Part shown: one piece after another, positions 1 through 61,109 of the stretch
How the letters are laid out: every line of letters begins with the position of its first letter
Numbering within the stretch: the stretch's first letter is position 1
Source: Girardia tigrina
Taxonomy: Eukaryota
NCBI GenBank assembly: GCA_001938485.1
Contig: MQRK01180317.1
Location: 89,499-150,906 of the forward strand
Direction of reading: 5' to 3'
DNA length: 61,408 nt
The notes under the pieces: generated by a model
The model's database searches: none
What the model was told of the DNA's origin: nothing
Seen by the model: only the letters and a program-made list of their open reading frames with translations
Translations under genes and position numbers: made by a program

Positions 1-1135
1 TACGTGGCATAGACTCAATAAGCGAATTACAATACTCATTAGTTATTTTTTTCCAGCATGTTTTAATACCTTCAATTAAATCTGATTTTTTTATTTCCTC
101 TGATTTAATCAAGGTTTTAGGCTTGAACCAAAGGTTTTCAATTGGGTTTAGATCCGGACTTTGGCTTGGTCAGTCTAAAACTACAATATTTTTTTCTGGT
201 GAGATACTCTTTCACCTTTTTGTGTGCTTTGGATCATTATCATGCTGGAATATGCAATTATCTTTAAATAAACGAGCTGATGATGGAATCATGTGCTGAG
301 AAAGCATTCTGATATACATATTGGCATTCATTATACCTTCTATTATATGTATATCACCAACACCAGCTGAACTGAAACATCCCCAAGCCATAACAGAGTC
401 ATCATGATTGACTGTTTGCTTCACATGTTTTGGTTTAAGAAGTTCTCCAGGTCTTCTCCAAGTACAGACCTTTCCATCCCTGCCTCTTCTATTTAATTTT
501 GTTTCGTCTGAGAACAAAACACGTTTCCAATCTTCAACTGTCCAACTTTGGTGCTTTAAACCAAATTGTTACCTTGCTTTAATATGCTTTTTGGTCAAGA
601 GCGGCTTTTTCAGTGGTGCTCTGCCATGAAAACCTGCTTCGTGCAGTCTTCTTTGAACAGTTTTTGCACTCACATGTGCAATATTTGTTTTTTTTGGCTT
701 TACAGCAACGTCTGCAGCATTTGACTGATTTGATTTTTCAATTAAATCAAGTATTTTCTTGTCTATCTTTGCTGTAGTCACCCTGGGTTTTCCTGTTCTA
801 GGCTTGTTCTGATAAGTTCCAGCCGTTTTAAACCGTCTTAATGTATAATTGACAGTGGAAAATGGAACATTCAGCTTCTTTTCAATTTCCCGACTTGAAT
901 AACCTTCGTCTTTAAGAGTTTTTATTGAAACTCTAAGAGAAAAGTTAATTTCCTGGGTTTTCGTCATTAAGGCTCTTGGAATAAAATTTTATATAATATA
1001 AGATTAAAAAACCAACTTGACTCTCAAATAATAATTTTATTGATTGATTCTACGATTTTTTCTATAAAATTATAACTTTAATTTTTAAAAAAGTCAATAA
1101 TTAATTCTGAGCAAATACTTTTGTCCATCGACTTT
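1..1135 (-). mobile_element. Tc1 (DD34E) DNA transposon, transposase pseudogene, running off the window edge
   Basis: ORFs 569-967 and 212-517 are in one frame split by a stop. Motifs: HTH, GKPR, FSDE, VMAWGCFS, FQHDNDPKH, then D*PSQSPDLNPIENLW at ~135-180. Confidence 0.93.
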
Positions 1136-3050: not shown

Positions 3051-3568
3051 TGTGAGGAATATTTTAAATTTGGTATGTTGAATTTTGTATGTTGAGTTTA
3101 GTATTTGGAAATGTGTTTCTCCCACCCAGATGGAAAATTGATATTTTAGATGTTCACGATGAATAATTATTCGAGTATAATTTGCATTTTAAAGTACAGC
3201 ATAAGATGTTTAAAAAACTTTAAAAATATTAAATCGTTTCAAATTTTCATATTAAAAATTTAAATAAAGTAAATAGCTTTTAACTAAACTTTAAATAAAT
3301 AAATGTTCTTTCTTTACATAAAATCATTTTTAAAATAAAATTAATATGTAGATAAAATTATTACTAAAATTACAAAATAAGAACTTTAAAAATAAAATCT
3401 GAAAATAATGAAAAATTTGATCGAATAATTGTTTATTAAAAACATTAACTAAAATTTATTAATTTAGAACGATGTCGAATTACGAAAGCTTTGCTGAGAG
3501 TTGTCCAAAAGACAATTCTAATTGTATTGAAAATAAAAGTTCGGAAACCCATGTTGATGTTCTTAATA
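3051..3568 (+). mobile_element. Solo-LTR-like element (TGTGAGG...TTAATA family), copy 1
   Basis: 5-bp TSD GTCAT (3046-3050 and 3569-3573); homologous to five other copies in the window. Confidence 0.85.
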
Positions 3569-14342: not shown

Positions 14343-15822
14343 AAATTGTGAAAAATGGCGTTCACTTTTTAATAATGAATATCAATTACCACTATTTTTT
14401 AAATTACTTAGGCATAATATTAATATTTTAAAAAAAATTATTCATAAATTAAGAAAGAAATAAAAATATTTATTTTTCTTGAAAAAATAATTATCAGAAT
14501 ATAATTTCATATTTTCAAACGACTTGTTCCATTGTTCATTTATTTTCATTGAATTTCTAATTTATTTTTCATTTAAAAAATTATAATTAAAATGTATTTT
14601 TTTAAACAAATAATTTTAAATGAATTTTTTTTCTTTTTATAAAATTACTTTGTAAATATATCTGCAGGTTAAATTAATTAATAATTAAATTTTCGATAAT
14701 TAAATTCTGAATTTCAAAGAAAAAAATTAACACAAAAATTTCAATAGAAATTCTATTATTGAAAATTAAATTTATTTGTGATAAAAATAAATCAATGAAC
14801 TAAATTTAATAAAATATTAATAAGTTTTCCATTTATGAAAATACAAAATTGATTTTATTACAATAATATATTGAAAATTATTTTTAATATCAAATTTTAT
14901 TTGTTAGAATAATAAAGTTTTTTTAAAAAATATTATATTAATTAATAATAAAAAAGCCTTGATTAAAGTTTAATTCTATTGTTGAAGTCTTTTGAACTCA
15001 ATAATTTTGTTAAACTATTTCACAAATATTAAAACAAAATTTTTTTAAATAAATAAAAAAAATTTTCTGTTATATTTTTTGTGAAGAAATATGAAGAATA
15101 AATTATAAAATATTATTATTTATGAATCAATTAATTTTATGAAAAAAAAGGCGTCAGTCTTCGATGTATTTTAATAATATTTTGATCAATTTATTTTTAA
15201 TTTTAATTTTAGAAGTAAACAAAATTTTAATTAAAATATATTTCACATTATTTTATCAATAAATATTTTTAAGAAGCTAAACAAAAAAAATATATTTTAC
15301 AAAAAATACAAAAGAAAATAATGAAAATCGCTTCCATTTTTATAAAAAAGTTAGAATAAGAAAAGCAGAAAAAAAATAAAATAATAATTTAAAAAATCAA
15401 ATGAAATTTAATTATAATTTTCTAAAGGATTTTTTTTCTTTTTATAAAAAAATATTATTAAAAATAATTTATTATTTATTATTTATTTTTTAAAAGAATA
15501 TTCTTATTTTGAAATAGTTAAAAATAAATAAAAAAAACGTCTGTGTAGATAGACTCAATTTTTTGACAGTTCAGATTAATTCGTTGATAAAATCAAATCG
15601 ACAATTAGTCAAAAGTAGCAGTAAAAATAATATTTTCTTTGGAATTATTTTATTTTGTTTATAAACGAAGACGTTTTTTATATAATTTATAGTATTTTCA
15701 ATAAGTGAATAAAGATTTCAATTAAAATTCACATTAAAAAACATAAAAATAGTTATAATTTAGCACTTTTCAACTTATTAACTGTTAATTTTCAGATCAA
15801 TAAAACATCGTTGGTTATTTAC

Positions 15823-16376
15823 TGTGAGGAATATTTTTGAAAGGTGCTTATTATATGTTGTTTGGTTTGTTGTTTTAGGATTGTGTTTCTCTCATTTAGA
15901 TGGAAGATTGATATTTTAAATATTTTAAAACGTTGGATTATTTAATCCATTATTCAAATTTAAACCACCAATTTTAAAATTAAATTAATATTTCATAAAT
16001 AATATTTTAATAATAATTTTCTTAAAATAAATAAATTTATTTTAATTTAAAGTATAAATTATTTTCGTAATAATTAAATTGTAATTTAAATTTATTCGAA
16101 TAATAGGACGTTAAAGAATATTATTAAAAAAAATATCAATCAAGAACGATGACGAGCTACTCATGCTTTACGGAGAATTGTTCTGGTGACAATTCAAATT
16201 GTGATGCAAATAAATGTATTGAAAATTCAATTAATGTTCTTAATATTAAGGATACATTAACAAAATTTTATCAATTTAGCGAGATGTCAAATTACGAAAG
16301 CTTTACTGACATTCCTAAAAACAATTCAAACTGTGATAAAAATAAATGTGTGAAAACCATATTCGTGTTCTTAATA
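15823..16376 (+). mobile_element. Solo-LTR-like element (TGTGAGG...TTAATA family), copy 2, with duplicated 3' end
   Basis: Starts TGTGAGGAAT. The terminal ATG...GTTCTTAATA block occurs twice (ending 16245 and 16376). No matching TSD. Confidence 0.7.
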
Positions 16377-21135: not shown

Positions 21136-23410
21136 CAATGGCGAATCCAGGGGTGTGGCTGAGGTGGCTAACCACCCCCTCTTGTTTTTTTTCATAAAAA
21201 CAGGTTAACCTTTTTGCATCATAAATAAACGAACAAAAAGGAATGTAAGGAAGTGTGCTGAGAAAATCTGTTTTATTGTTTACATAAATATTGATTCAAG
21301 ACAAGAAATAAACGTCAACTTCATTGTGGAATCCTAAAACAAAACCAATTGTGCTTAGCGTGTGATGCCGGTATTATTACAATGGGTGCTTTTACTAATA
21401 GGCAAACCTAAGCAACTGTTTAGGGGCGCCAATCAAAAAAGGGCACTTAATTTTTTTTCGAAAATTTTATCACATAAGTAACTGTTCCGCAGAATGCAGT
21501 TTTTCATTTTTGAAAAGATTAAAAACATATTTAAGATCAACTATAAAAGAACAACGCTTAAATGCTTTATCGATTTTATGATTAGAAATAGATTTTACGT
21601 TAAATTTAGATTCTTCCGAAATAATTGATGATTTTAGTGGAACAAAATCAACATAAAAATTTTAATATGTTAAAGAAAGTAAAGGAAAAGAATTTTTTTC
21701 AAATAAATTAACAAAAATCACCAAAAATAATAAGTTTTTTCCATTCTTTTTATTAGCTTACTTTCTTTATATGTATGTGTATATATGTATCCATGGAATT
21801 TAAAAACCTACTTTTAAAGGCTCTTTACTCAATCAATTTTCTCCAAACTTTAATAATGCATCTGTACATCTATTGTCCCATGCATTATATTTAAATTTTC
21901 CTCTTGCTTCACTCTCAATTTATCGAAATTTCTGACGAAAAATGGGTCATATTATTTTCAAAAAAATGAAAAGATAGTTTTCTGACATTTAGGTAATGAT
22001 AAAAATGGTATTTAATAAAAATGTTTTATTCCTTTTGTTTTTATTTTTTGTTTTAGCATGTCCAGGTGTCCACCAAACAAGCGTCTTAAACAGTTGTGTC
22101 TTAGTTTCGTACGTATTTCCTCTACAGCTCTGCAAAACAATCATTCTGGCGACTGTTTGAGTGTCAGTATCCCACTTCATCAATCAATAGGTCTTTTTGA
22201 GACAAGTTTATCATCTGTATTACATGATACTATAGTGAATGTCTCCTTAGTAGATTCAGAGTGTGTCTTACAACAGCCATTAGATTTTGTTAATTGCACT
22301 GACATAACTTCAATTCTTGATGAAAGTATTCTTCGAAAAACGAGTGATTAAGAAAAAAAGAACTTCTTAAAAAAATTGTTGGAAACCATTAGTTTCAAAT
22401 TTCAAATTTGAAAGGAAAAGCTTCCCAATTCGCGAAGGTATGGCTAAAATTATTTCTTTTCAATCAAAATGGCTTGATAATTACAAATTATCACATACAT
22501 TAATCAAAATGGTTTAAAGGGTGGACGGTGTCTTCCGTGTGTATTATTCTTGAGCATTTCTGAAAAAGAGAAGTTAGTTTCTTTTGTCAAAACACCCTTT
22601 TCAAACTATTACAAATCAAAGGAACTTATATGGCCACGAATCAAAAACTTATCATTAAATGACAATGAAATGATTTTCAACTACTAAAGCACACTTAGAT
22701 AATCCAGCATTGCGTATCGACTCAGCAATTAATTCATTGATTGCTGAAAATATAGAAAAAATCAAAAGTTGTTTCCAACAATTATCGAAACTGTCATGTA
22801 TTGTGCACGCAAAGAAATTTCAATGTGAGGCCATCGAGATGAAAACGCTCAATTTGCCGAAAATCCGTCAACAAATGAAGGTAATTTTATTGCCTTGCTC
22901 TATCTTTTAGCAAAGCAAAATGGTATTTTAAAGCTTCACGTACGTAATGGACCAAAATACCATATACACCAGCAAAATTATACAAAGCAAGATTATAAAC
23001 ATTGCTACAAACCTCATTTGTGACTATTTTCGTAAGTGTCTAAAGGCTTGTCCACACTTTACAATAATTGCAGATGAGACAAACTCACATGGCCGAGAAA
23101 TTATTTCAGTCTGTATTCGTTTCCTTGACACATTTCAAGAAAAGCCTAGAAAAATTGCAAATTTGTTCATTGCGTTACATCCACGTAAGATGCAAGCGCA
23201 ATCACATTTTTTATGACTGAGTTTTGTAGTTTCTATTTAACAAGTGCTTCTATAAATATACTGTGTGATTTGAAGTTTCTTATCTACGAAACATGGAACA
23301 TACTCTTAATTTCGTAAAAGTAAATGCTAAAATATTTCAACGTAAAATAAAACTTGTTTCAAATCGTAGCCACCCCCCTTTCAAAATCCTGGATCCGCCN
23401 NNNNNNNNNN

Positions 23411-25129: not shown

Positions 25130-25900
25130 TTAATTTAATAAAGGAAACAGTAGATAAAATACCTTTGAAAGATTTTACGAAAAATCAGAGTTTGGCTTCT
25201 CCTGATGGATCTAAGAAAGAAGTCGAAGGATCATTAGATATTAATAATATACCTAAATATTGTTTCATTGTACCTTATTCTGAAGGATTTAAAAACTTTA
25301 AAAATGCATTGTTAAAAGCAACTAACAATGAATTAAATTTGAAAATTATATCACGATCTCATAAAATTCAAAATATGTTCAGTAATAAATCTATTACACC
25401 TTTAACACTTTGTTCTGATATTGTTTATGAATATAAATGTTATGGGTGCAATACCACATACATTGGAGAGACTGCCCGTCATCTCTGTAAACGAATTCAA
25501 GAACATGGTCGAAAAGAGAGTAAGAGTAATATTGCAGAACATAGGAAAAAATGTACATGTGATGTTAATTTTGATAATTTCAAAATTCTGTGTAAGCATT
25601 TTGATAGATATTGGGAGAGTGTCGTGTGAAGCATTGTTAATTAGGTCACGTTGCCCTAAAATCAATGTTCAATCGGCAGTCTCAACCAGCTTATTGAGAA
25701 TTTTTGATTAGCATGATTTCATGCAATCGATTACATAATCATCATTTTTGTATTTATATACAGGTGAATTGATTATTAATTAGTGACCTGAAGATGACGG
25801 TAGATCCGTCGAAATATATTGCCTTGAAATATATTTTTAAATGGATGAGTGTTGTTATTAAAAGAAGATTTTCGTCCGGATTTTGTTTTATCAAAAATCA
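25130..25900 (+). mobile_element. Penelope-like element 3' part (GIY-YIG) with pLTR
   Basis: ORF 25165-25629: VPYSEG..IVYEYKCYGCNTTYIGETARHLCKRIQEH..NFKIL, frameshifting to EALLIRSRCPKINVQ. Confidence 0.92.
25781..25824 (+). ncRNA. Minimal type I hammerhead ribozyme
   Basis: CUGAAGA (25788-25794), GACGG/CCGUC, GAAA, palindromic AUAUAU. Confidence 0.82.
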
Positions 25901-39860: not shown

Positions 39861-41413
39861 CTTAATTTAAACTCCTATTGGCGCTTAGTGTAACGCATGG
39901 TTGCGCCCCATTCATTAGCTGACAATACAAACTGCTAGTCATACTTGAAAAACTAGTCATGGGCCAACGATATCTTGCTAACAAGGTTTATCTTTAATTT
40001 TTTTTAATATAAAATGATCTAAACCGGCTCCTAGATGTTTCAAATTTCTTGGTATGTGTAGTTGCAAAGAAGAAGTTTAATTATAATTTGTACAGAAAAG
40101 CATTGGTTTTATCGATATTTTAAATAGAAATTTTTCAATATTTATTGCATTATCATCAGTACCACTATGCTAATTGTTTAGGTCTACAATTATTTATTCT
40201 CTTCAGTACACTCAATGATAGAATAGAATATTTGTAATTTTTTTCACTCATGTCAGGAAGAAAAAGAAGGTCCCAAAGGAAAAATGAAAGCCGAAATTGT
40301 ATCCAAAAAATCTAGTATATTACTTGCTGATTTTTAAAAAAAAGCCAAAAAAGAAGCTGAACTCTCCAGTTCTTTAGAACCAAAAGACAGTAATTATCAA
40401 CCACCCGTTTTGACGACTCGGAGAAAAACATGATTTAAACAGATATTACTTTATGTGCTGATAAATACTCCGCAAATACTAAAGACCAAGAGGTCTAATA
40501 TAAGGAAGAGCTTGTTGAAAGTAACGGGAAAGATGAGACAGAAAAAAACCTTCTTAAAGTGAATCTGTAAATAAAAAATACTCAATATGATATAGTTTTA
40601 GCTGTACTAAAGTTTAACGATGTTGGTTATTTAGAATTTGAAGAAATGGACCAAACTATCGCGAGTTTCAAAGTCTCTTAGCAATCAAATTATTACTCTC
40701 GGACCCTTAGCTTTTCAACACACAAACAATATAGCATCCTTTTACCACGACGTTCGATTATATCGGCATGGTTTAAACTTCAACTAGTGAATGGAGAGGA
40801 AGTACATCGTTTATGGCTCTTAAATATATCAATCAATAAAGCTGCTTACTGTTTTTGTTGTCTACTATTTACATCATCGACTTCAAACTAAGGAATTTCT
40901 TTAAAACTAAAAAACGGTCCTCAAAAGGGGAGAAAGACTAAAATCTGATAAAAACAATTGTAGCCATCTCATGGTCACCCGACAAAAGCGCCTACCGAAA
41001 AATGCGCTCACCGAAAACTAAGTCTCGGAAATTAAAATTTCAGAAACAATAAAAAATTCAAGTGAATTTCAGAAAAAAATGAAAGGGTCAAGTATGAAAA
41101 GGTCAAAAAATGAAAAAATGAACTAAAATTTAGAAAATATCATTTTATTCTAAACTTCACTGGTGTTTATCAGTTTTTCTAATTTTTATTTGAATTTTTC
41201 AGTTTTCCTAAATTTTACTTGAATTTTTCATCTTTTTCTAATTTTTATTTGAATTTTTCATTTTTTCTAAATTTTATGTTACATGTTAAATTTAAAAATT
41301 AAATGAAATATTTAACATGAAAAAATATGGATAATTATTTGTTTAAATAATATCTATTTAAAAGTATTATTTGTTGAAAAATAAATTTTATAGATTTGTT
41401 ATTAGTTGTTACA

Positions 41414-41425
41414 AGCTATCCGGGC
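41414..41425 (+). promoter_or_regulatory. Atypical primer-binding site complementary to tRNA-Lys(UUU) nt 1-12
   Basis: AGCTATCCGGGC abuts the LTR end. Its reverse complement GCCCGGATAGCT is the conserved 5' end of metazoan tRNA-Lys(UUU). Confidence 0.78.
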
Positions 41426-41426
41426 A

Positions 41427-42163
41427 ATGATAAGCGATTTAAAAATTATACTCGATCATTTGGAGAAATTTAATGGAAATGGTAGTTTTGAAATTTAGAA
41501 GAAAAAGTTCATGATGATTATGAAAATCCAGGGGATTTTGGATCCGGCCCCATATCTTCCTTTTTTGTTGACGGATGTTCCGTTAAATATATACATGGAA
41601 TTGGACGAAAAGAAACAAAGCTACTGTGAAGAAGTACTGCAAATCTTGGACAATTCATATGGATTAACCAGACGATCTGCGTACAGCCAACTGATTAATT
41701 TGAAATATTACGAAGGACAAACTATTGACGATTACGTTTCTAAAGTAAAATATTGGCATCAAAAATCTACGATATGACCAAGGCAGCTTTTATGGCAAGA
41801 TTGCCGTTCGAGTTGCAATTGAATTTAGAGCAAACCGGCGATCATGATTTAACCGAAATGGTTGAATATAGTCGTAGGTATTTAGGAATTAAAAAGTGCG
41901 TCATACAAAGTTTAATGTCAGCGGTACAAAACGTTGGTGATGGCAAGATCGTTTCTAAAGAACGAGGTGCGGTAAGCGGCGGTAGAAGGAGTTCCTTTAC
42001 AAAACCTCGTATGCCACATAACGGAAATCTGGTACAAACAAAGGTAAACTGTTATGAAAATTCTCAGCGACAATCTGATGGACAAATAATTTGCTATAAA
42101 TGTAAGCAACTTGAACATGTAGCAAAATATTGCAAGTCGGGAAATGGTCAGGGGAGTTTGTAG
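41427..42163 (+). pseudogene. gag: Gypsy gag
   Basis: MISDLKIILDHLEKFNGNGSFEI*KKKF..., one stop and one frameshift; zinc knuckle CYKCKQLEHVAKYC. Confidence 0.9.
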
Positions 42164-42197
42164 GTGCCGGCACTCTCCCTCTGACATTTCCGGGGCG
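42139..42197 (+). promoter_or_regulatory. -1 ribosomal frameshift signal at the gag-pol junction
   Basis: G GGA AAT in gag phase with pol in the -1 frame. Stem GGGGAGT/ACTCTCC 5 nt downstream; loop CCGG could pair with CCGG at ~42190. Confidence 0.7.
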
Positions 42198-44134
42198 ACC
42201 GACCATGACTGTCATTGTTAACAACAAGTCGGTTACAGCTTTGATAGATTCGGGTTGCTCAAAAACTCTTGTTTTGAAAGGGTTGATCAATGGAAACTCA
42301 TTACAGTCAAATGAGCAACGAATTGTTTTGGCTAATGGCGATGATATATGTGTGAGGATTAGTGACGTGGAATTGACTATAGATAATAGAAATATGAAAG
42401 AAGAATGTTCTGTTATGAAATACTTACCCTATGATTTGAGAATTTTAATTGGTATGGATGTTAAAAGTGAACTTTGGGGTGTGAAAATTAATAAGGGTGT
42501 TATCAAATTTGGTGTGTGTGTAGGAGAAGGAATAAAGAAAGCTGGTGAAAAACTGAGTTGTGTTGCGGGTGTTGTGCCAAGTGTTAGCCTGAATTGAATT
42601 TAAGGATAATTTGACGGTTAAATGGAAGTGGAAAGATGAGGCGCCGAGTTATCTACAGATTCGACCTTTAAGGATGACAAATCGAAAGACATAGCCACAA
42701 GGAAAATCCCTGAGGAGTGGATGAAGAAGGGCTATTTAATCGAATATGACGAGAAGGAAATGGGTAAATCGATATGATCTATACCCATATTTGGAATATT
42801 GCAAGTTAACAAATCCAAGATAAGACCGATCTTTGATTTTAGGAAATTAAACAATTATGTAGACGTGTACAGTTTTTCAGCATATATATTTTTGGAAAAA
42901 CTTCGTACCTGGCGGCGAAAAGGATCAAGATTTTCCATACTTGATTTATCAGAGGCGTATATGCTGATTCGCGTTCAGAAGGAAGTGTAACGGTATCAAT
43001 CATGTATCATTAATGGCAAAAATTTCGCTCTAACCAGGATGGGCTTTGGTTTAAATATCCCTCCGACCATTATGACTGAAATTGTCAAGTGGATTTTAAA
43101 TTCTGATCCTAGAGCACGTGAAAACACTGACTCGTACATCGATGACATTTACGTTGACGAAACTACAATTACAGTTGACGAAATTAGAATGTTGTTCGAG
43201 AAATTTAGTCTTAAATGCAAAAAACCAGAAAATCTCTCAATGGATAAAGAGGTGTGAGTGTTGAGAGTTAAAGTCTTTAAAGATAAGAATTCGGTGATAT
43301 GGATGAGAGATAATAATTTCAAGGATGAGATACTTACCGAATCAATATAGCGTCGCGAGTTATATTCGTGGTGTGGTCAATTAGTAGGAATCCACCCTGT
43401 TGCTGGTTGGCTACGTCCATCATGCTCCTACATAAAAAGGCTCAGTGAAGGAAAATGGGATGAGAAAATAGATGTCAAATTATTCGAGAAAATCAAATTT
43501 GTTTTGAAAAAAGTTAAGGATAAGTTAGAAGATCCTTGTAGAGGGATATGGAGTATTGATGATTGTAAAGACGGCCTCATATGGTGTGAAGCCACTTCGA
43601 GAGCCATTGGGGCAGCATTGGAAGTTAAAGGAAATATTATAGAAGACGCATCGTGGTTAAGGAAAACTGACGATTATAGGCAAATAAACGTAACAGAACT
43701 AGAAGCAGTTGTAAAGGGTCTAAATCTGTGTATTAAATGGGGACTAACGAATGTTGTAGTAAAATCAGAGAACAAATCTGTAGTTTCTTGGATAACTGAG
43801 GCACTATCAGAGCGAAATAAATTACACACAAAAGCCTCTTCGGAGCTTTTGATAAAGCGCCGATTGTCAATCATTAAGTAGTTGTGTCAGGAATACGAAA
43901 TAATTTTGAAAAATGAGTTTGTTAATAGTGAAGACAACAAGGCTGATGAACTGACAAGAATACCCAAACAATTAAAACAAAGCATTTCCCTTTTGTTTGT
44001 AACAGATGACCTATTCAAACTACAGAAACTTCATGACATATGTCATTTAGGTACAATGAGAATGTGACATCAGTGCGATAAATTGGAAATAAATGAGTCA
44101 AATGCGGATATAAAGGATTTGATCTCGAAGTGTC

Positions 44135-44493
44135 TGTGAGGAATGTTTTGAATTGTGTATTGATATTTGTGTATGTAGAATGTTGATTCGGATTGTGCCT
44201 CTCCTACACAGATGGATGATTGATATTTTCTTTGATTCTTAATTAAAAATAATTTAATTTAATTTTAAAGTAAAAAGATTTAAAATAATTTTTGAATGTA
44301 TTATTTATTTTTTAATGTAATTTAATTTTAACCAATTAGATTCTTTATAATTTAATAATTNNNNTTAACAGATTTTCATTTATTGAAAATAATTAGTTTG
44401 AACTCAGAAAAAATTGATCAAGAGAGATGTCAAATAGTGAATGCGCTTGTAATATTAATAAATGTTGTAAACCTCATATTGATGTTGTTAATA
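44135..44493 (+). mobile_element. Solo-LTR-like element (TGTGAGG...TTAATA family), copy 3, inside the Gypsy integrase
   Basis: TSD GTGTC; excision restores the KCQSC of the HHCC finger. Confidence 0.9.
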
Positions 44494-47099
44494 GTGTCAA
44501 AGTTGCCAATCTATTTATCCGGCGCCAATAAAATGGGAAACTAGCAAATTAGCTGTCAATGAAAACTGGACAAGAATTGCAGCGGATGTCACAAAATTTG
44601 ATCAACAAAAATTCTTAAGTATCATTGATTGTGGACCCTCTCGATTTGCAGTATGGAAACTAATCAAAGCTGAGGATGTCAAGACGATTGATACAGAGTT
44701 TTCAAATTTGTTTTGCGAGCGTGGATCTCTAAAGGAGTTGATTATTGACAATTATACGACATTTCATTCAGCCAAATTCAGCAAGTTGATGGAGAAGTGG
44801 AATTTACATATCTTATACCGCACTATTAATCGACCAAAATGCAACGGAATAATAGAGAGAAATCATAAGACAATCAAGAGAATCGCGTCTAGATCGAATA
44901 TCAGTATCATGGAAGCCTTATGGTAGTATAACAATACACCGTCCGACGGAAAGGAGACACCTAGTTCAGCATTTTACAAGTAAATTCCAGTCGGTTTGGA
45001 GATAATCGAAAGAATTAAAAAAGAGCCGGTTTACAATATGGTAAAGACAGACTTCGTAGAGCAACAGTTAGTCTGGGTAAAACCTGAAAATAATATGCCA
45101 TGTACAAAGCAATGGTCAAGAGGTGTTGTCGTTAGAAAATTGGATCAAAGAAAGTACTAAATAAATTGTGATGGTTTTTGCGGTCCACGGCATATAGCAG
45201 ATATTCGACCAAGGCAACCAGACCTGTCGCGAAACTCTTACTCGGATTACATGTTGGAAAATTACAACGAATCAGCTTCGAGTGTTAAGCAAAGTGAATC
45301 GGGAATCAGCAACAAACTCCAAAGAGAAAGACGAAAACCGAATTATTAGAACGAGTATGTAGTAGATATAGATTCTTGTGACAAAGAATCTGGGGGTGAG
45401 TGTTACATGTTAAATTTATTTATTAAATGAAATATTTAACATGACAAAAATATGGATAATTATTTGTTTAAATAATATCTATTTAAAAGTTATTATTAAA
45501 AGAAAATTAAATTTTATATATTTGTTATTCGTTGTTACATTTTACTTGAATTTTTAATTTTTTTCTGAAATTTACCAAAAATTTTCATTTTTTAAATTTT
45601 AATTTTTGAGACTTATTTTTCGGTGGGCACTTTTGTCGGGGCGCTTTTGTAGTGGGAGCTTTTGTCGGTGTACCCCATCACATGGCTTTTAATTTATCGA
45701 AGGAAGTCAAACGATGACTAGTTGGTGGAAGAGGAATTGACTCAAACATTTAAATGCATATTATTTTTGCAAAACTATGCTGGTAGAATATTTTGCCAGG
45801 AATACTCAACTGTATTATGTTTTTGGTTTCACAAAATTTTGCATTGCATGCCTATGAAGAAACCTTGAATGCCGAAAATGGTAAAATGTTGAAAACTTTC
45901 TAGTGCTTATCAAACCCGTTGCTAAGTATGATCCACTACTACTCAGTAACCCAACTGAAGCCCTAACAGAAACTCCTTTGGATCTTCCTAGTTTTATTAT
46001 TTTTTATGGAGATGGTGAATTTCCGAATCTGAGAATTTCATAACGGATTTTGTTAATATCAGCAGGTTTGATTGCAAGCTGTGAGCGGTCGTTCAGGAAA
46101 TGGAAACTTATTTTGTGTCATCTTTGGTCGTCTCGGTGATCTTGCTCTTCTTAGCGTTCAAATCGAATTTCAGTTTTTTATAAGACAAAGTATGGCATTT
46201 GAAAAACATTTCTTAACAATAACAAATTAAAAAAATATTAATTAATATAAATACTAATTAAAGATTATTAGTAATAATAATTATTTATTACATAGAAATA
46301 TTTTTTTAATATAATAATTTTTTCTGTTGAATATTATTTGTTAAAAGTGAAATTTTTGTATATAAATTAATTAATTTAATTGATTATCTAATTAATTTTT
46401 CAAATTTATATTTTGTATATAAGCATTAATTTGTCAATGAAATTTCTTCAATTAATTGAAAAATCATTGAATAAATATCTTTGTAAATAAATTATTAATT
46501 ATTCTTTCGATTTTGAGAATAAAAAATTATTTGGGTTTTATTTTTTAAATTTTTACATATTTCTATTATTATTTTCTAGTGAAAATTTTAAAAAATTATT
46601 AATAGTGAAAAATCTTCCATTTTATTTTTGTTAAAAAGTATTTTGTTTTAAATAACAGGAAAATTGTTCAGAATTTATTTAAATTGAAAATATTTTTTAT
46701 TATATTATATATAAATGTATAAATTACGTTTTTCCTGAAATTAATTATTATTTATTGATTTATTTAATTAATAATATTAAATCGAAGATTTTTTTCTTGT
46801 TTAAATTTCTATGTTAAATCGATTTTTCTTGATATTAAATATTTTTTGAAGATTTTTTTTCAAAGATTTTTGAGATTGAGTGATATTATTTGAAAATTAG
46901 TTATATTTTTGAGACCATTTGAATCGATTTTAATACATATTAGAATGGAACGAAAGTTTTGTCAGTTATTTAAAAAACTGTAAATAATTTTTTATTTAAT
47001 TTATCTTTTATGTATTATGTATATAGTGTATTCTTAAAAGCATTTTGATATATTATTCGTATTTTATAATCTTTTCTATACAAAGTTATTAATTTTAAC

Positions 47100-48127: not shown

Positions 48128-48541
48128 TGTGAGGAATGTTTTGAATTGTGTGTTGATATTGTTCATGTTGTATGTTGATTCAGATTGTGCCTCTCCTACA
48201 CAGATGGATGATTGATGATTTCTTTGATTCATACTAATTAAAAATAATTTAATTTAATTTTAAAGTAAAAAGATTTAAAATAATTTTTGAATGTATTATT
48301 TATATTTTAATGTAATTTAAAATTTGAATATATTAATTTAATATGTTCTTTTTTAAAAAATGTTTAGATTTAATTTCAACCAATTAGATTCTTTATAATT
48401 AATTATTTTTACTAACAGATTTTCATTTATTGAAAATAATTAGTTTGAACTCAGAAATATATTGATTAAGAGAGATGTCAAATAGTGAGTGCGCTTGTGG
48501 TATTAATAAATGTTGTAAACCTCATATTGATGTTGTTAATA
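48128..48541 (+). mobile_element. Solo-LTR-like element (TGTGAGG...TTAATA family), copy 4
   Basis: TSD CTTTT; closely similar to copy 3. Confidence 0.9.
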
Positions 48542-48620: not shown

Positions 48621-49693
48621 CAGGGTGCGGCAGCTATTTGAGAACAAAATGACATAAAGTTCAAAAAATGAATATACATCAGAAAAATAACATTTATTAC
48701 AATTTAAAATTTTACATATATTAACACGTACATAAAGNNNNNNNNNNNNNNNNNNNNNNNNNNNNNNNNNNNNNNNNNNNNNNNNNNNNNNNNNNNNNNN
48801 NNNNNNNNNNNNNNNNNNNNNNNNNNNNNNNNNNNNNNNNNNNNNNNNNNNNNNNNNNNNNNNNNNNNNNNNNNNNNNNNNNNNNNNNNNNNNNNNNNNN
48901 NNNNNNNNNNNNNNNNNNNNNNNNNNNNNNNNNNNNNNNNNNNNNNNNNNNNNNNNNNNNNNNNNNNNNNNNNNNNNNNNNNNNNNNNNNNNNNNNNNNN
49001 NNNNNNNNNNNNNNNNNNNNNNNNNNNNNNNNNNNNNNNNNNNNNNNNNNNNNNNNNNNNNNNNNNNNNNNNNNNNNNNNNNNNNNNNNNNNNNNNNNNN
49101 NNNNNNNNNNNNNNNNNNNNNNNNNNNNNNNNNNNNNNNNNNNNNNNNNNNNNNNNNNNNNNNNNNNNNNNNNNNNNNNNNNNNNNNNNNNNNNNNNNNN
49201 NNNNNNNNNNNNNNNNNNNNNNNNNNNNNNNNNNNNNNNNNNNNNNNNNNNNNNNNNNNNNNNNNNNNNNNNNNNNNNNNNNNNNNNNNNNNNNNNNNNN
49301 NNNNNNNNNNNNNNNNNNNNNNNNNNNNNNNNNNNNNNNNNNNNNNNNNNNNNNNNNNNNNNNNNNNNNNNNNNNNNNNNNNNNNNNNNNNNNNNNNNNN
49401 NNNNNNNNNNNNNNNNNNNNNNNNNNNNNNNNNNNNNNNNNNNNNNNNNNNNNNNNNNNNNNNNNNNNNNNNNNNNNNNNNNNNNNNNNNNNNNNNNNNN
49501 NNNNNNNNNNNNNNNNNNNNNNNNNNNNNNNNNNNNNNNNNNNNNNNNNNNNNNNNNNNNNNNNNNNNNNNNNNNNNNCATTCGTAAGAGTAGCTTTTGC
49601 CATGTCTACCAGCAAAAATAAAATTATGTAATTATAACACACAAAAAGATATGGTGTCTATATTACGTGTTCTCAAATAGCTGCCGCACCCTG
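48621..49693 (-). mobile_element. Young Tc1/mariner-superfamily element, interior in an assembly gap
   Basis: Perfect TIRs CAGGGTGCGGCAGCTATTTGAGAACA with TA flanks; MAKATLT start on the minus strand. Confidence 0.85.
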
Positions 49694-51344: not shown

Positions 51345-51773
51345 GGGGAAAATTGGCATTCTGTCCATAAGACCACCCCGGGGGGTTACTCGTTGCCATG
51401 GCAACGGTTACCATGGCAACGGTCGCGGTTACCATAGCAACGGTCGCGTTCACTCAAGCAACGGTCGCGTTCACTCAAGCAACGGTCGCGTTCACTCAAG
51501 CAACGGTCACGGTTACCATAGCAACGGTTCCGGTTCACTTGGAAACGCTTCTGATTGGTTCCCAGTACCTTAGCCTAGGCAGCAACGCTTCCGAGAACCA
51601 ACCAAAAGCGTTTTTGGGTAATCGCGACCATTGCTATGGTAACCGGAACCGTTGCTAGAGTGATCGGAACCATTGCTATGGTAACCGCGACCGTTGCATT
51701 GGTAACCGAACCCGTTGCCATGGCAACGGGTAACCATCTGGGGTGTCTTGTGGGCAGAATGCCCATTTTCCCC
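51345..51773. mobile_element. Palindromic MITE carrying an array of X-box (RFX) motifs
   Basis: TIRs GGGGAAAATTGGCATTCTGTCCATAAGAC / GTCTTGTGGGCAGAATGCCCATTTTCCCC with TA flanks; 21-22-bp internal repeats containing GTTRCCATRGCAAC. Confidence 0.85.
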
Positions 51774-52001: not shown

Positions 52002-52524
52002 TATTAAGAACACCAACATGACTTTTCGAACTTCTATTTTCAATACAATCAGAATTGTCTTTTGGACAACTCTCAGCAAAACTTTCGTAATTCGACATCG
52101 TTCTAAATTGATGAATTTTAATGTTTTTAATAAACAATTATTCGAACAAATTTTTCATTATTTTCAGATTTTATTTTTAAAGTTCAAATTTTGTAATTTT
52201 AGTAATAATTTTATCTACATATTAATTTTATTTAAAAAATGATTTTATGTAAAGAAAGAACATTTATTTAATTTAAAACTTAGTTAAATTAGTTACTTTA
52301 TTTAAATTTTTCATATGAAAATTTGAAACGATTTGATATTTTTAAAGTTTTTTAAATATCTTATGCTGTACTTTAAAATGCAAATTATACTCGAATAATT
52401 ATTTATCATGAACATCTAAAATATCAATTTTCCATCTGGGTCGGAGAAACACATTTCCAAATACTAAACTCAACATTCAAATTCAACAAACCAATGACAT
52501 ACCAAATTTAAAATATTCCTCACA
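52002..52524 (-). mobile_element. Solo-LTR-like element (TGTGAGG...TTAATA family), copy 5
   Basis: Close to copy 1; TSD TATAT / TGTAT. Confidence 0.85.
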
Positions 52525-55254: not shown

Positions 55255-55700
55255 ATAATTTAACATCGATTATCGAGAAATCGTGGAATTTGGATAATTG
55301 TTTTTGTTCTACAAAACATTTTCCTAAATTAACAGAAAAAGATCTGATTTCAGTTAAGTCTATTGATTACGATGAAAATAAGATCCAAAAAATTGGAAAT
55401 ATAAATCATCGTCTGAGATTATCGAAACATAATCGGTGACATGATGTGGAGTTCCATCAGCGATTGATAATTAAAGTGGCTTCAGGGGGAAATAAAGAAA
55501 AAGTGCTCGAACTTTTTTTCCACGATATGTTACTCGTCGATCGTGTGGAACTGACAACTCTTTTGATTAATATCTTACTGAAGAGCCTTGTCAATCTTGG
55601 TGACCATAGCGAAGCGGTTTTTGAGATTTTGATAAAAATCAAAGGAAATCAGAATGAGTCCAACTCCATCGACGTATAGCCTGGTGCATCGGTTGGGAAA
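55255..55700 (+). pseudogene. Pentatricopeptide-repeat protein fragment, PTCD1-like
   Basis: ORFs 55248 and 55446 share one frame with one stop: HDVEFHQRLII..KVLELFFHDMLLVDRVE..INILLKSLVNLG..EAVFEI, then shift to PTPSTYSL. This fits PPR periodicity. Confidence 0.55.
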
Positions 55701-55950
55701 ACGTGAGATTCAAATTTTTTACTCTCCCCGACCTGACACTCGCTCCCCGTCGCCGGAGCGCCGCAGCCACAAAACCGCTGCGCCCGCTCTCGTATCACCA
55801 ATTTGTTTTTATCAAAGTATAAAAAATAATAATAAATCTTTTATTAATTCATATTTTAAAATATTCAGTATTTATTTCGTTACTTTTTATTTATTTGTTT
55901 TAGATTTTATAATTAATATTTTATTTTGCTATAAAAACGAATATGTTATA

Positions 55951-57246
55951 CAGGGTGTCCCAAAAATATGTATACACATTAAAAATTTAATTTTATTGAA
56001 TTTTATTGAATTTTATTTATGTTTAACTTTCATTATATTTAATATAAATAGTTTTTTTAACATAAATAGGTTTTTTGTAGATTCAGTCCCTATCATAGGA
56101 ATGGCATGCAGGCTTAACTTCGAAGAAAGAAAATTTATTATGAAATACTATTGGAAATATGAAAATGTACATGAAGTACAAAAACAATTCAGGAAGGAAT
56201 TTAAAAAAGAACCTCCAACGCGATTTACCATCCCTCGAATTAGAGATAAGTTCGAAGTTGATGGAACTATTCACAATGTTCACAAACAGCATGCCGGAAG
56301 ACCCCGAACATCATCAAGTTCAACTGAGGTAGAAAGAGTTCTGGAAATGTTTCAGAAAAATCCGAGAAAGTCTCTACGACAAGTATCTCGTGAGGTTGGA
56401 ATTTCCAAGTCTACTGTCCAGCGCATAATGCAACGTTGTAANNNNNNNNNNNNNNNNNNNNNNNNNNNNNNNNNNNNNNNNNNNNNNNNNNNNNNNNNNN
56501 NNNNNNNNNNNNNNNNNNNNNNNNNNNNNNNNNNNNNNNNNNNNNNNNNNNNNNNNNNNNNNNNNNNNNNNNNNNNNNNNNNNNNNNNNNNNNNNNNNNN
56601 NNNNNNNNNNNNNNNNNNNNNNNNNNNNNNNNNNNNNNNNNNNNNNNNNNNNNNNNNNNNNNNNNNNNNNNNNNNNNNNNNNNNNNNNNNNNNNNNNNNN
56701 NNNNNNNNNNNNNNNNNNNNNNNNNNNNNNNNNNNNNNNNNNNNNNNNNNNNNNNNNNNNNNNNNNNNNNNNNNNNNNNNNNNNNNNNNNNNNNNNNNNN
56801 NNNNNNNNNNNNNNNNNNNNNNNNNNNNNNNNNNNNNNNNNNNNNNNNNNNNNNNNNNNNNNNNNNNNNNNNNNNNNNNNNNNNNNNNNNNNNNNNNNNN
56901 NNNNNNNNNNNNNNNNNNNNNNNNNNNNNNNNNNNNNNNNNNCCTAACACCACTAGATTTTTTCTTATGGGGATACTTAAAAGACAAAGTCTACGCTAAG
57001 AAACCTGCAACAATCGCTGAATTGAGAGAAGCAATTGAACATGAATGCAGCAAAATACCAATGGAAATGTTTGTTGATGTGTGCGATTCCATTGCTTCGC
57101 GTTGTCAGAAGTGTCTGGATCAAGATGGACGTCAGTTTGAGAACAAACTGTGACCAATATAAATAAATATTACTCGTACTTATTTTTACTTTTTTAATCA
57201 ATAAAATTAAATTTTTAATGTGTATACATATTTTTGGGACACCCTG
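55951..57246 (+). mobile_element. Young rosa/Visitor-type Tc1/mariner element; transposase 56101-57153 spans a gap
   Basis: Perfect TIRs CAGGGTGTCCCAAAAATATGTATACACATTAAAAATTTAATTTTATTGA with TA flanks; GRPR HTH region and LTPLDFFLWGYLKDKVY. Confidence 0.95.
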
Positions 57247-61059: not shown

Positions 61060-61109
61060 NNNNNNNNNNNNNNNNNNNNNNNNNNNNNNNNNNNNNNNNN
61101 NNNNNNNNN

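What the first reader, a model, noticed from the sequence alone, without database searches (positions are those of the whole stretch)
41414..41425. Gypsy primer-binding site matches the 5' end, not the 3' end, of tRNA-Lys(UUU): candidate new priming mechanism
Seen: the 5' LTR ends ...GTTACA at 41413 (boundary fixed by the 3' LTR and TSD). It is followed with no spacer by AGCTATCCGGGC, then A and the gag ATG at 41427. There is no TGG-starting PBS, and this 12-mer is the only GC-rich patch nearby. Established: metazoan tRNA-Lys(UUU) begins GCCCGGAUAGCU, the exact complement, so the match starts at the LTR edge and ends at tRNA nt 1. Modes known to me are tRNA 3'-CCA priming, anticodon-cleaved half-tRNA priming (copia, Ty5) and Tf1-type self-priming, where 11 nt of the element's own 5' end is cut by RNase H. 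The LTR has no complement of this 12-mer, so self-priming is not supported. Inference: the primer is a 10-12-nt 5' tRNA fragment, either host-made or cut after annealing (a trans version of Tf1 priming). I do not know of a description of this, but cannot check the literature.
Basis: partly seen in the sequence, partly recalled or inferred. Interest (0 to 1): 0.92.

Follow-up and report, generated by a model that had tools for sequence, protein, structure and literature searches.

The report
PBS matching tRNA 5' ends
A dead 4.3-kb LTR retroelement carries, directly after its 5' LTR, a 12-base site complementary to the first 12 bases of tRNA-Lys(UUU), and about 60 relatives carry the same kind of site matched to other tRNA 5' ends, which points to a way of starting reverse transcription that I could not find described.

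Summary
The element spans 41277-45539, with 137/139-bp LTRs, a 5-bp TSD and a purine tract. AGCTATCCGGGC (41414-41425) follows the 5' LTR end with no spacer, and gag's ATG starts at 41427.

The site is a family trait, not chance:
- In 58 of 86 related loci (metagenomes, sequencing-run assemblies, a barnacle and an argonaut genome) the LTR end ...ACA is followed directly by AGCTA-NNNN-GGC. Four of these deviate by one base or an indel.
- A gag start codon follows 0-66 nt later.
- The four variable bases fall into about 10 discrete classes.
- Published 5' tRNA probes and primers end or start with exactly three of these classes: Lys(UUU) (the window), Lys(CUU) and Phe(GAA).
- Complementarity always stops at the LTR edge (tRNA nt 12) and at tRNA nt 1.

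Rivals fail. No element carries its own complement, so Tf1-type self-priming is out. Intact relatives have the same site, so a decayed TGG site is out. One distant relative does use a normal TGG site.

My reading is that a 12-nt 5'-terminal tRNA fragment primes minus-strand synthesis, possibly cut after annealing as in Tf1. This is inferred, not shown. The host's own tRNAs could not be checked. The "Gypsy" label is not supported. My paper searches found no description of this. The window copy is broken and about 95% identical to an intact contig.

The parts
41272..41276 (+). Target-site duplication, left copy (TTTTA)
   Evidence: The same 5 bases follow the 3' LTR. The joined flanks restore a unit of the local 30-bp tandem repeat.
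41277..41413 (+). 5' LTR (137 bp, TGT...ACA), very A+T-rich, with AATAAA at 41380-41385
   Evidence: Direct repeat with 45401-45539 at 91% identity.
41414..41425 (+). Primer-binding-type site AGCTATCCGGGC, the exact complement of nt 1-12 of tRNA-Lys(UUU)
   Evidence: The tRNA identity comes from published probes. The same site type sits at the same place in 58 related loci.
41427..42163 (+). gag (broken), with one CCHC zinc knuckle
   Evidence: Pfam zf-CCHC on an ORF piece. It is 88-89% identical in protein to the intact partial gag of L197. The ATG lies 1 nt after the site, as in relatives.
42205..45397 (+). pol (broken): protease, RT, DUF7047, RNase H (RVT_3/RNase_H type), integrase
   Evidence: Pfam on ORF pieces. 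tblastn outer bounds against intact P0151 cover 944 of 953 residues at 87% identity. The domain set comes from intact relatives.
45392..45400 (+). Polypurine-tract-like run GGGGGTGAG directly before the 3' LTR
   Evidence: L003 has a comparable purine run before its LTR start.
45401..45539 (+). 3' LTR (139 bp)
45540..45544 (+). Target-site duplication, right copy (TTTTA)

Best explanation
The 12-mer is the minus-strand primer-binding site of a compact (about 4 kb) LTR retroelement clade that pairs with the 5' end of a host tRNA rather than the 3' CCA end. Nucleotides 1-12 of the tRNA are the 5' strand of the acceptor stem, U8, A9 and the first three bases of the D stem. They anneal to the genomic RNA directly next to U5. 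The tRNA is cut between nt 12 and 13, so that U12 carries the 3'-OH paired to the first base after the LTR, and reverse transcriptase extends it into U5. When the plus strand later copies the primer, it runs off at tRNA nt 1. That explains why complementarity ends exactly there and why the site is always 12 nt long. The window copy used tRNA-Lys(UUU). Relatives use Phe(GAA), Lys(CUU) and other tRNAs that share the same first three bases and the same bases 8-12. Shown here: the position, the exact complementarity, both boundaries, the family-wide conservation with discrete class switching, and the absence of any self-complement or TGG site. Inferred: that it primes at all, and who cuts the tRNA. 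The cut could be made by the element's own RNase H at the end of the 12-bp duplex, as Tf1 does on its own 5' end, or by a host nuclease that leaves a 3'-OH. The window copy itself is a dead fossil of this system.
For: The 12-mer starts at the first base after an LTR edge fixed by the TSD and the 3' LTR. The same holds in L011, L014, L027, L036 and L077, where the edge was set by LTR-to-LTR comparison. In 58 of 86 related loci, LTR ...ACA is followed directly by AGCTA-NNNN-GGC, counting four loci that deviate by one base or an indel, and a gag ATG follows 0-66 nt later. In 50 distinct contexts the three LTR-end bases and 8 of 12 site positions are at least 96% conserved, while the flanks run at 30-60%. 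This is partly by construction of the pattern. The variable bases form discrete classes. Three classes equal the ends of published 5' tRNA probes or primers: Lys(TTT) in zebrafish and human Lys19, Lys(CUU) in Triops, and Phe(GAA) in Drosophila and human. The probes continue ...CTG before AGCTA, whereas the elements have ACA, so pairing stops at nt 12. The barnacle and argonaut genome copies carry the Phe class. The classes are not monophyletic on a pol tree but follow sample series, as expected if the host tRNA sets the site. Predicted duplexes are -19 to -25 kcal/mol. Intact elements carry the site: L001 has the window's 12-mer, and dozens of loci have open gag and pol. A distant relative, L002, has a conventional TGG... 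site 3 nt after its LTR, so the 5'-end site is a derived trait of this clade.
Against: There is no biochemical or small-RNA evidence, so a primer has not been seen. The window holds no tRNA gene and the host is unidentified, so the host's tRNA-Lys(UUU) 5' end is assumed from zebrafish and human. Five of the ten classes were not matched to any documented eukaryotic tRNA. They occur as nt 1-12 of tRNA genes only in viral/prokaryote-type contigs. A 12-nt primer needs a precise cut inside the D stem, for which no enzyme is shown. G10 is often modified in eukaryotic tRNAs (my own knowledge), which could weaken pairing. Four loci deviate by one base or an indel.
Confidence: 0.7

Rival explanations
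1. The 12-mer does bind the tRNA 5' end, but for another purpose, and minus-strand synthesis is primed by something not yet recognised. The other purpose could be control of gag translation (the start codon is 0-20 nt away), genome packaging or dimerisation, or acting as a target or decoy for host 5' tRNA fragments.
For: The site abuts the gag ATG (median about 4 nt), so tRNA binding would block scanning or initiation. No primer has been observed.
Against: The site occupies exactly the place where every LTR element has its PBS, with zero spacer. It has a fixed length bounded by the LTR edge and tRNA nt 1. No other conserved candidate site lies between the LTR and gag, because there is no room for one.
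Confidence: 0.12
2. The primer is some other host RNA whose 3' end happens to carry the same 12 bases, not a tRNA fragment.
For: Only complementarity is shown, not the identity of the molecule.
Against: Ten classes would need ten such RNAs. Three classes equal nt 1-12 of three different tRNAs exactly. The fixed positions are those shared by the three documented tRNA 5' ends.
Confidence: 0.05
3. Tf1-type self-priming: the first bases of the element's own transcript fold back on the site and are cut by RNase H.
For: The duplex length (12 against 11 nt) and the start at RNA nt 1 resemble Tf1 and Tj1 (PMC4600332).
Against: The window has no complement of the 12-mer within 2 mismatches on either strand, and its LTR is almost pure A+T. 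In 48 of 51 relatives there is no complement anywhere in the locus. None of the three exceptions recurs in other loci of its class.
Confidence: 0.02
4. Chance, or a decayed canonical TGG-type site in this dead copy.
For: The copy is old (LTRs 91% identical) and heavily mutated.
Against: L001 has the identical 12-mer upstream of an open gag. About 60 relatives have the same site type. The only TGG-type site seen is in the distant relative L002.
Confidence: 0.01

Closest known systems
Tf1/Tj1 self-priming (fission-yeast LTR retrotransposons)
   Same: The PBS pairs with the first 11-12 nt of an RNA, counted from its 5' end. The primer must be freed by a cut at the end of that short duplex (PMC4600332; in Tf1 the cut is made by RNase H, from my own knowledge). 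Plus-strand copying of the primer would end by run-off at nt 1.
   Different: Here the RNA is a host tRNA acting in trans, not the element's own 5' end. No self-complement exists. The proteins are not chromovirus-like.
copia / Ty5 'half-tRNA' priming
   Same: The primer would be a fragment of a tRNA rather than its 3' CCA end. For copia it is a 5' fragment (review PMC5371799; details from my own knowledge).
   Different: From my own knowledge, copia and Ty5 pair with the anticodon-stem region of initiator tRNA-Met and use a fragment of about 39 nt or the anticodon stem-loop. Here pairing is with nt 1-12 of elongator tRNAs (Lys, Phe and others), and the fragment would be only 12 nt.
Canonical retroviral / LTR-retrotransposon tRNA 3'-end priming (for example tRNA-Lys3)
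   Same: A host tRNA is selected by base pairing to a site directly after U5. The same tRNA species (Lys-UUU) is used by some retroviruses.
   Different: The opposite end of the tRNA is used. The site is 12 nt and starts AGCTA, not 18 nt starting TGG. A cut inside the tRNA is required.
Cigr-1 of Ciona (about 4.2-kb Gypsy-like element), recalled from memory as similar in size and layout
   Same: Only a lead: a small two-ORF LTR element of marine invertebrates. It is listed as a small Gypsy clade that also occurs in molluscs (PMC6238403).
   Different: Not tested. No sequence of it was available through the tools, and the original paper is not held.

Membership tests
LTR retrotransposon (structural definition) | Two LTRs with TG...CA ends, a target-site duplication, a purine tract before the 3' LTR, and gag and pol between them | tested here: met
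Ty3/Gypsy (Metaviridae) | pol order PR-RT-RH-IN | tested here: met
   Pfam on intact relatives. BEL/Pao elements and retroviruses share this order, so it does not discriminate.
Ty3/Gypsy (Metaviridae) | Gypsy-type RNase H (Pfam RT_RNaseH / RT_RNaseH_2) and a strong RVT_1 match | tested here: not met
   None of 12 members hits these families even at E up to 1. The RNase H hits RVT_3/RNase_H instead, and RVT_1 is weak (best E-value 4.5e-08).
Ty3/Gypsy (Metaviridae) | RT groups with Ty3 rather than other lineages | tested here: inconclusive
   A profile search against PDB puts retroviral IN (MMTV) and foamy-virus and HIV RT on top. Ty3 matches only through its integrase. No reference RT phylogeny could be built with the tools.
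BEL/Pao | Pfam Peptidase_A17 / DUF1758 / DUF1759 / DUF5641 | tested here: not met
   No such hit in 12 members.
Tf1-type self-priming elements | The PBS is complementary to the 5' end of the element's own transcript (in the 5' LTR) | tested here: not met
Tf1-type self-priming elements | The primer is released by the element's RNase H cutting an RNA duplex | not testable with these tools
   This needs biochemistry. It is only an analogy here.
copia/Ty5-type tRNA-fragment priming | The PBS is complementary to the anticodon-stem region of initiator tRNA-Met | tested here: not met
   The site equals nt 1-12 of Lys(UUU), Lys(CUU) and Phe(GAA).
Canonical 3'-end tRNA priming | A TGG-starting site complementary to a tRNA 3' end, 0-5 nt after the LTR | tested here: not met
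   Absent in the window and in the clade. Present in the distant relative L002.
Proposed 5'-end tRNA PBS clade | The site class equals nt 1-12 of a tRNA of the same host | not testable with these tools
   No tRNA gene lies in the window or in any eukaryotic locus fetched. Only cross-species probes from papers were available.

The most novel reading that the evidence does not exclude
A widespread clade of compact metazoan LTR retroelements starts reverse transcription from a 12-nt fragment cut from the 5' end of elongator tRNAs (Phe, Lys and others), a trans form of Tf1 priming. This would be a fourth mode of LTR-element priming. It would be invisible to standard PBS finders, and it would give abundant 5' tRNA fragments a direct line of interaction with retroelements.
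Probability: 0.5. Interest if true: 0.9.

Novelty: new variant of a known kind. Interest (0 to 1): 0.82.

Why it matters
Primer choice is a defining step of retroelement replication, and a 2017 review names only these modes: the tRNA 3' end, copia's half-tRNA, and Tf1's tRNA-independent priming. A site that reads the first 12 bases of a tRNA would add a mode that joins two of them, tRNA-dependent like copia and a short 5'-terminal duplex like Tf1. It would show how primer systems can evolve, since a distant relative still has a TGG site. On the practical side, annotation tools that look only for tRNA 3'-end complements will call this whole clade 'no PBS'. It also makes a question testable with existing data: whether 5' tRNA fragments, which are abundant in animal germ lines and of unclear function, pair with retroelements in the way 3' fragments pair with canonical PBSs.

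Tried and rejected
- **Self-priming.** I searched the window on both strands with up to 2 mismatches, and 51 relatives for their own complement. It is not there.
- **Alternative genetic code as the cause of the many in-frame stops.** Rejected. All three stop codons occur, they replace many different residues, and substitutions relative to the intact copy are GC-to-AT biased.
- **tRNA genes.** None were found in the window or in any of the 89 related loci, by ARAGORN or Rfam.
- **Assigning the five other site classes to eukaryotic tRNAs through the literature.** Searches in RNA letters, DNA letters and both orientations, plus one supplement, found no tRNA.
- **A scan of viral contigs.** It found the classes as nt 1-12 of Phe, Thr, Ile and Asn tRNA genes. 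These are not host tRNAs, so this only shows that the strings are tRNA-like.
- **Host identification.** A search with a Tc1-like transposase fragment gave no named hit.
- **Search for a prior description.** Searches found nothing. The Cigr-1 lead could not be checked.
- **Longer queries.** Every query was a single ORF piece given by reference.

Full report
**Observation**

The window is A+T-rich (about 26% G+C). At 41277-45539 it holds a 4263-bp LTR element.
- The LTRs (41277-41413 and 45401-45539) are 91% identical, start TGT and end ACA.
- TTTTA flanks both ends. Joining the flanks restores one unit of the surrounding 30-bp tandem repeat. The LTR edge is therefore fixed without reference to the 12-mer.
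- GGGGGTGAG lies directly before the 3' LTR.
- AGCTATCCGGGC occupies 41414-41425, then comes one A, then the gag ATG.
- There is no TGG-type site.
- The 12-mer is unique in the window, and nothing complementary to it exists within 2 mismatches.
- ARAGORN and Rfam find no tRNA or other known RNA in the window.

**State of this copy**

ORF pieces give a CCHC knuckle, an aspartic protease and an RNase H of the RVT_3 type.
- An ENA metagenome contig (L197, sample ERZ2271576) is 94-95.5% identical in DNA and has an open partial gag and an open 953-residue pol.
- Against that pol, the window's pol has 15 in-frame stops.
- At the DNA level, gag and pol together have four frame-shifting indels and one in-frame indel relative to L197.
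- One short repeat is nested in the integrase part.
- gag shows at least one frame change and no stop in the part that can be compared.
- The substitutions are GC-to-AT biased, and all three stop codons occur in place of many different residues. This is ordinary decay, not a variant genetic code.

The copy is dead, and its site is a fossil of what the active family used.

**The family**

A phmmer search with the RNase H piece found 890 relatives.
- Intact members have a gag of about 250 residues and a pol of about 950 residues, or one fused ORF of 1160-1201 residues.
- The domain order is PR, RT, DUF7047, RNase H (RVT_3/RNase_H type), IN.
- Most contigs are 3.5-4.5 kb, and full insertions measure about 4-4.6 kb, so the whole element is unusually small.
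- Named hosts are a barnacle and an argonaut. The rest come from metagenomes and sequencing-run assemblies.

**The site is a family trait**

I scanned 86 related loci: two more by protein look-up besides the intact sister contig L197 above, 80 from a metagenome scan, and three from two named genomes and the closest relative. Three further loci were fetched afterwards.
- In 58 of these loci the pol strand shows an LTR end ...ACA (rarely TCA or ATA) followed directly by AGCTA, four variable bases, and GGC.
- A gag start codon follows 0-66 nt later, with a median near 4.
- Most of the other loci appear to be fragments without a gag 5' end.
- In five further insertions the LTR edge was set by comparing the two LTRs. 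The 3' LTR ends ...CTACA followed by unrelated flank, and the 5' LTR is followed directly by the 12-mer.
- Across 50 distinct contexts, the three LTR-end bases and eight site positions are at least 96% conserved, against 30-60% in the flanks. The pattern used to find the sites fixes some of these columns, so the five LTR-defined cases and the consistent position before gag are the independent support.

**Classes and tRNA identity**

The classes, as they stand in the loci:

| Site | Where found |
|---|---|
| AGCTATTTCGGC | 15 metagenome loci, the barnacle, the argonaut, L199 and L200 |
| AGCTATCTAGGC | 12 loci |
| AGCTATCGCGGC | 11 loci |
| AGCTATCACGGC | 4 loci, plus L198 |
| AGCTATCCCGGC | 4 loci |
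| AGCTACCTCGGC | 3 loci |
| AGCTATCCGGGC | the window and L001 |
| AGCTAGCCGGGC | L041 |
| AGCTATCCGGAC | L070 |
| AGCTAACACGGC | L078 |

Four more loci deviate by one base or an indel.

Published oligonucleotides complementary to tRNA 5' ends identify three of the classes:
- A zebrafish 5' tRF-Lys(TTT) probe ends in the window's 12-mer (PMC4688932). A human 5' fragment 'Lys19' begins with its complement (PMC3710361).
- A Triops 5' half tRF-Lys(CUU) probe ends in the L041 class (PMC4501094).
- A Drosophila tRNA-Phe(GAA) 5' probe ends in the commonest class (PMC7038984). A human Phe(GAA) forward primer begins with its complement (PMC10505166).

In all three probes the bases before AGCTA are ...CTG, whereas the elements have ACA. 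Pairing therefore stops at tRNA nt 12 on one side and at nt 1 on the other.

The other classes were not found as eukaryotic tRNAs in the papers searched. In viral contigs they do occur as nt 1-12 of tRNA genes for Phe, Thr, Ile and Asn. That shows they look like tRNA starts, but it says nothing about the hosts.

On a neighbour-joining tree of 26 intact pol ORFs the classes are not monophyletic. They do follow sample series, which fits a site set by the host's tRNA.

**Mechanism**

The simplest reading is that nt 1-12 of a tRNA anneal next to U5, giving 12 bp at -19 to -25 kcal/mol. The tRNA is then cut after nt 12, and U12 primes minus-strand synthesis. A primer that begins at tRNA nt 1 also gives a natural run-off end for plus-strand strong-stop DNA. 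That explains the fixed 12-nt length.

The nearest analogue is Tf1/Tj1, where the first bases of the element's own RNA pair with the PBS and a cut at the duplex end makes the primer (PMC4600332). Here the RNA would be a tRNA acting in trans. Copia's half-tRNA (PMC5371799) is the other relative.

What cuts the tRNA is unknown. An RNase H-type cut leaves the 3'-OH that is needed, and this clade's RNase H is of the cellular/retroviral type rather than the Gypsy type. That may or may not be relevant. All of this is inference from sequence.

**Rivals**
- Self-priming fails: there is no complement in the window or in 48 of 51 relatives.
- A decayed TGG site fails: open-reading relatives carry the same site type, including L001 with the identical 12-mer upstream of an open gag.
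- A tRNA-binding element with a different role cannot be excluded, for example control of gag translation, given the adjacent ATG. Its position, zero spacer and fixed bounds are nevertheless those of a PBS.
- A distant relative, L002 (5.8 kb, fused gag-pol of 1416 residues), has a normal TGG... site 3 nt after its LTR. The 5'-end site is therefore derived within the group.

**Classification**

The order PR-RT-RH-IN fits Gypsy, BEL/Pao and retroviruses alike.
- None of 12 members hits the Gypsy RNase H families or the BEL/Pao families.
- The best solved-structure matches are retroviral integrases and foamy-virus and HIV RTs, with Ty3 matching only through its integrase.

I therefore do not file it under Gypsy and leave the clade unplaced. 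Cigr-1 of Ciona, which I recall as a 4.2-kb element, is an untested lead.

**Novelty**

Searches of the open-access and preprint library for a PBS complementary to a tRNA 5' end found nothing. A 2017 review lists only 3'-end (bipartite), half-tRNA and tRNA-independent priming. Subscription literature could not be searched, so an earlier description cannot be ruled out.

**Limits**

The host is unidentified. No host tRNA could be read. Five classes are unassigned.

- I wrote and printed these before I treated it as a break, and I do not repeat the place here.
- One search printed, without places, which residues of the intact relative stand opposite the stops.
- In my own reasoning I recalled several tRNA strings from memory. 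Every string searched came from the window, from the loci, from the finding's tRNA quote or from a paper.

Queries from the broken copy were single ORF pieces given by reference. No contig taken for human was met.

Noticed in passing
window 48128-48541, 3051-3221, 52344-52524 (-), 15822-15917: A short A+T-rich dispersed repeat (about 170-410 bp, 68-81% identical between copies). One further copy is nested inside the element's integrase region. It could be a MITE-like or SINE-like family.
   Followed up: partly
window 41150-41276 and 45540-45600: A 30-bp tandem repeat array into which the element inserted. The repeat unit restores the empty site.
   Followed up: yes
window 51395-51549 and 51618-51722: Two G+C-richer arrays of a 21-bp tandem unit that look like reverse complements of each other, that is, a palindromic pair of arrays.
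   Followed up: no
window 569-967 (-), 55654-57153 (+), 25165-25629 (+): Other mobile-element remains: a Tc1/mariner-type transposase N-terminus, a DUF4817/HTH ORF that is open only because it spans an N run, and a weak GIY-YIG ORF, possibly Penelope-like.
   Followed up: partly
window 48704-49642 (-): The 312-aa and 286-aa 'ORFs' here are artefacts of the 841-base N run at 48738-49578. Other N runs lie at 1186-1348, 23400-23410, 56442-56942 and 61060-61109. None was filled or looked up.
   Followed up: yes
window 41380-41385 (5' LTR) and the matching place in the 3' LTR: AATAAA (ATTAAA in the 3' LTR) lies only about 30 nt before the LTR end. This suggests a very short U5 and hence very short strong-stop DNA.
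   Followed up: no
L002 1-6593 (ENA ERZ25070786): A distant relative with 694-bp LTRs, a long 5' leader, a fused 1416-residue gag-pol and a conventional TGG-type PBS 3 nt after the LTR. It is a useful outgroup for the origin of the 5'-end site.
   Followed up: partly
L197 1-3599 and L001 1-3589 (ENA ERZ2271576): One metagenome assembly holds both a copy about 95% identical to the window element with open reading frames and a second, roughly 73% identical family member with the same 12-mer. The window's host or a close relative was probably in that sample.
   Followed up: partly
L054 1955, L063 68, L058 1927, L005 231: Site variants that break the AGCTA-NNNN-GGC rule by one base or an indel, in front of open gag ORFs. 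They may be mutated copies or may match tRNAs with unusual starts.
   Followed up: no
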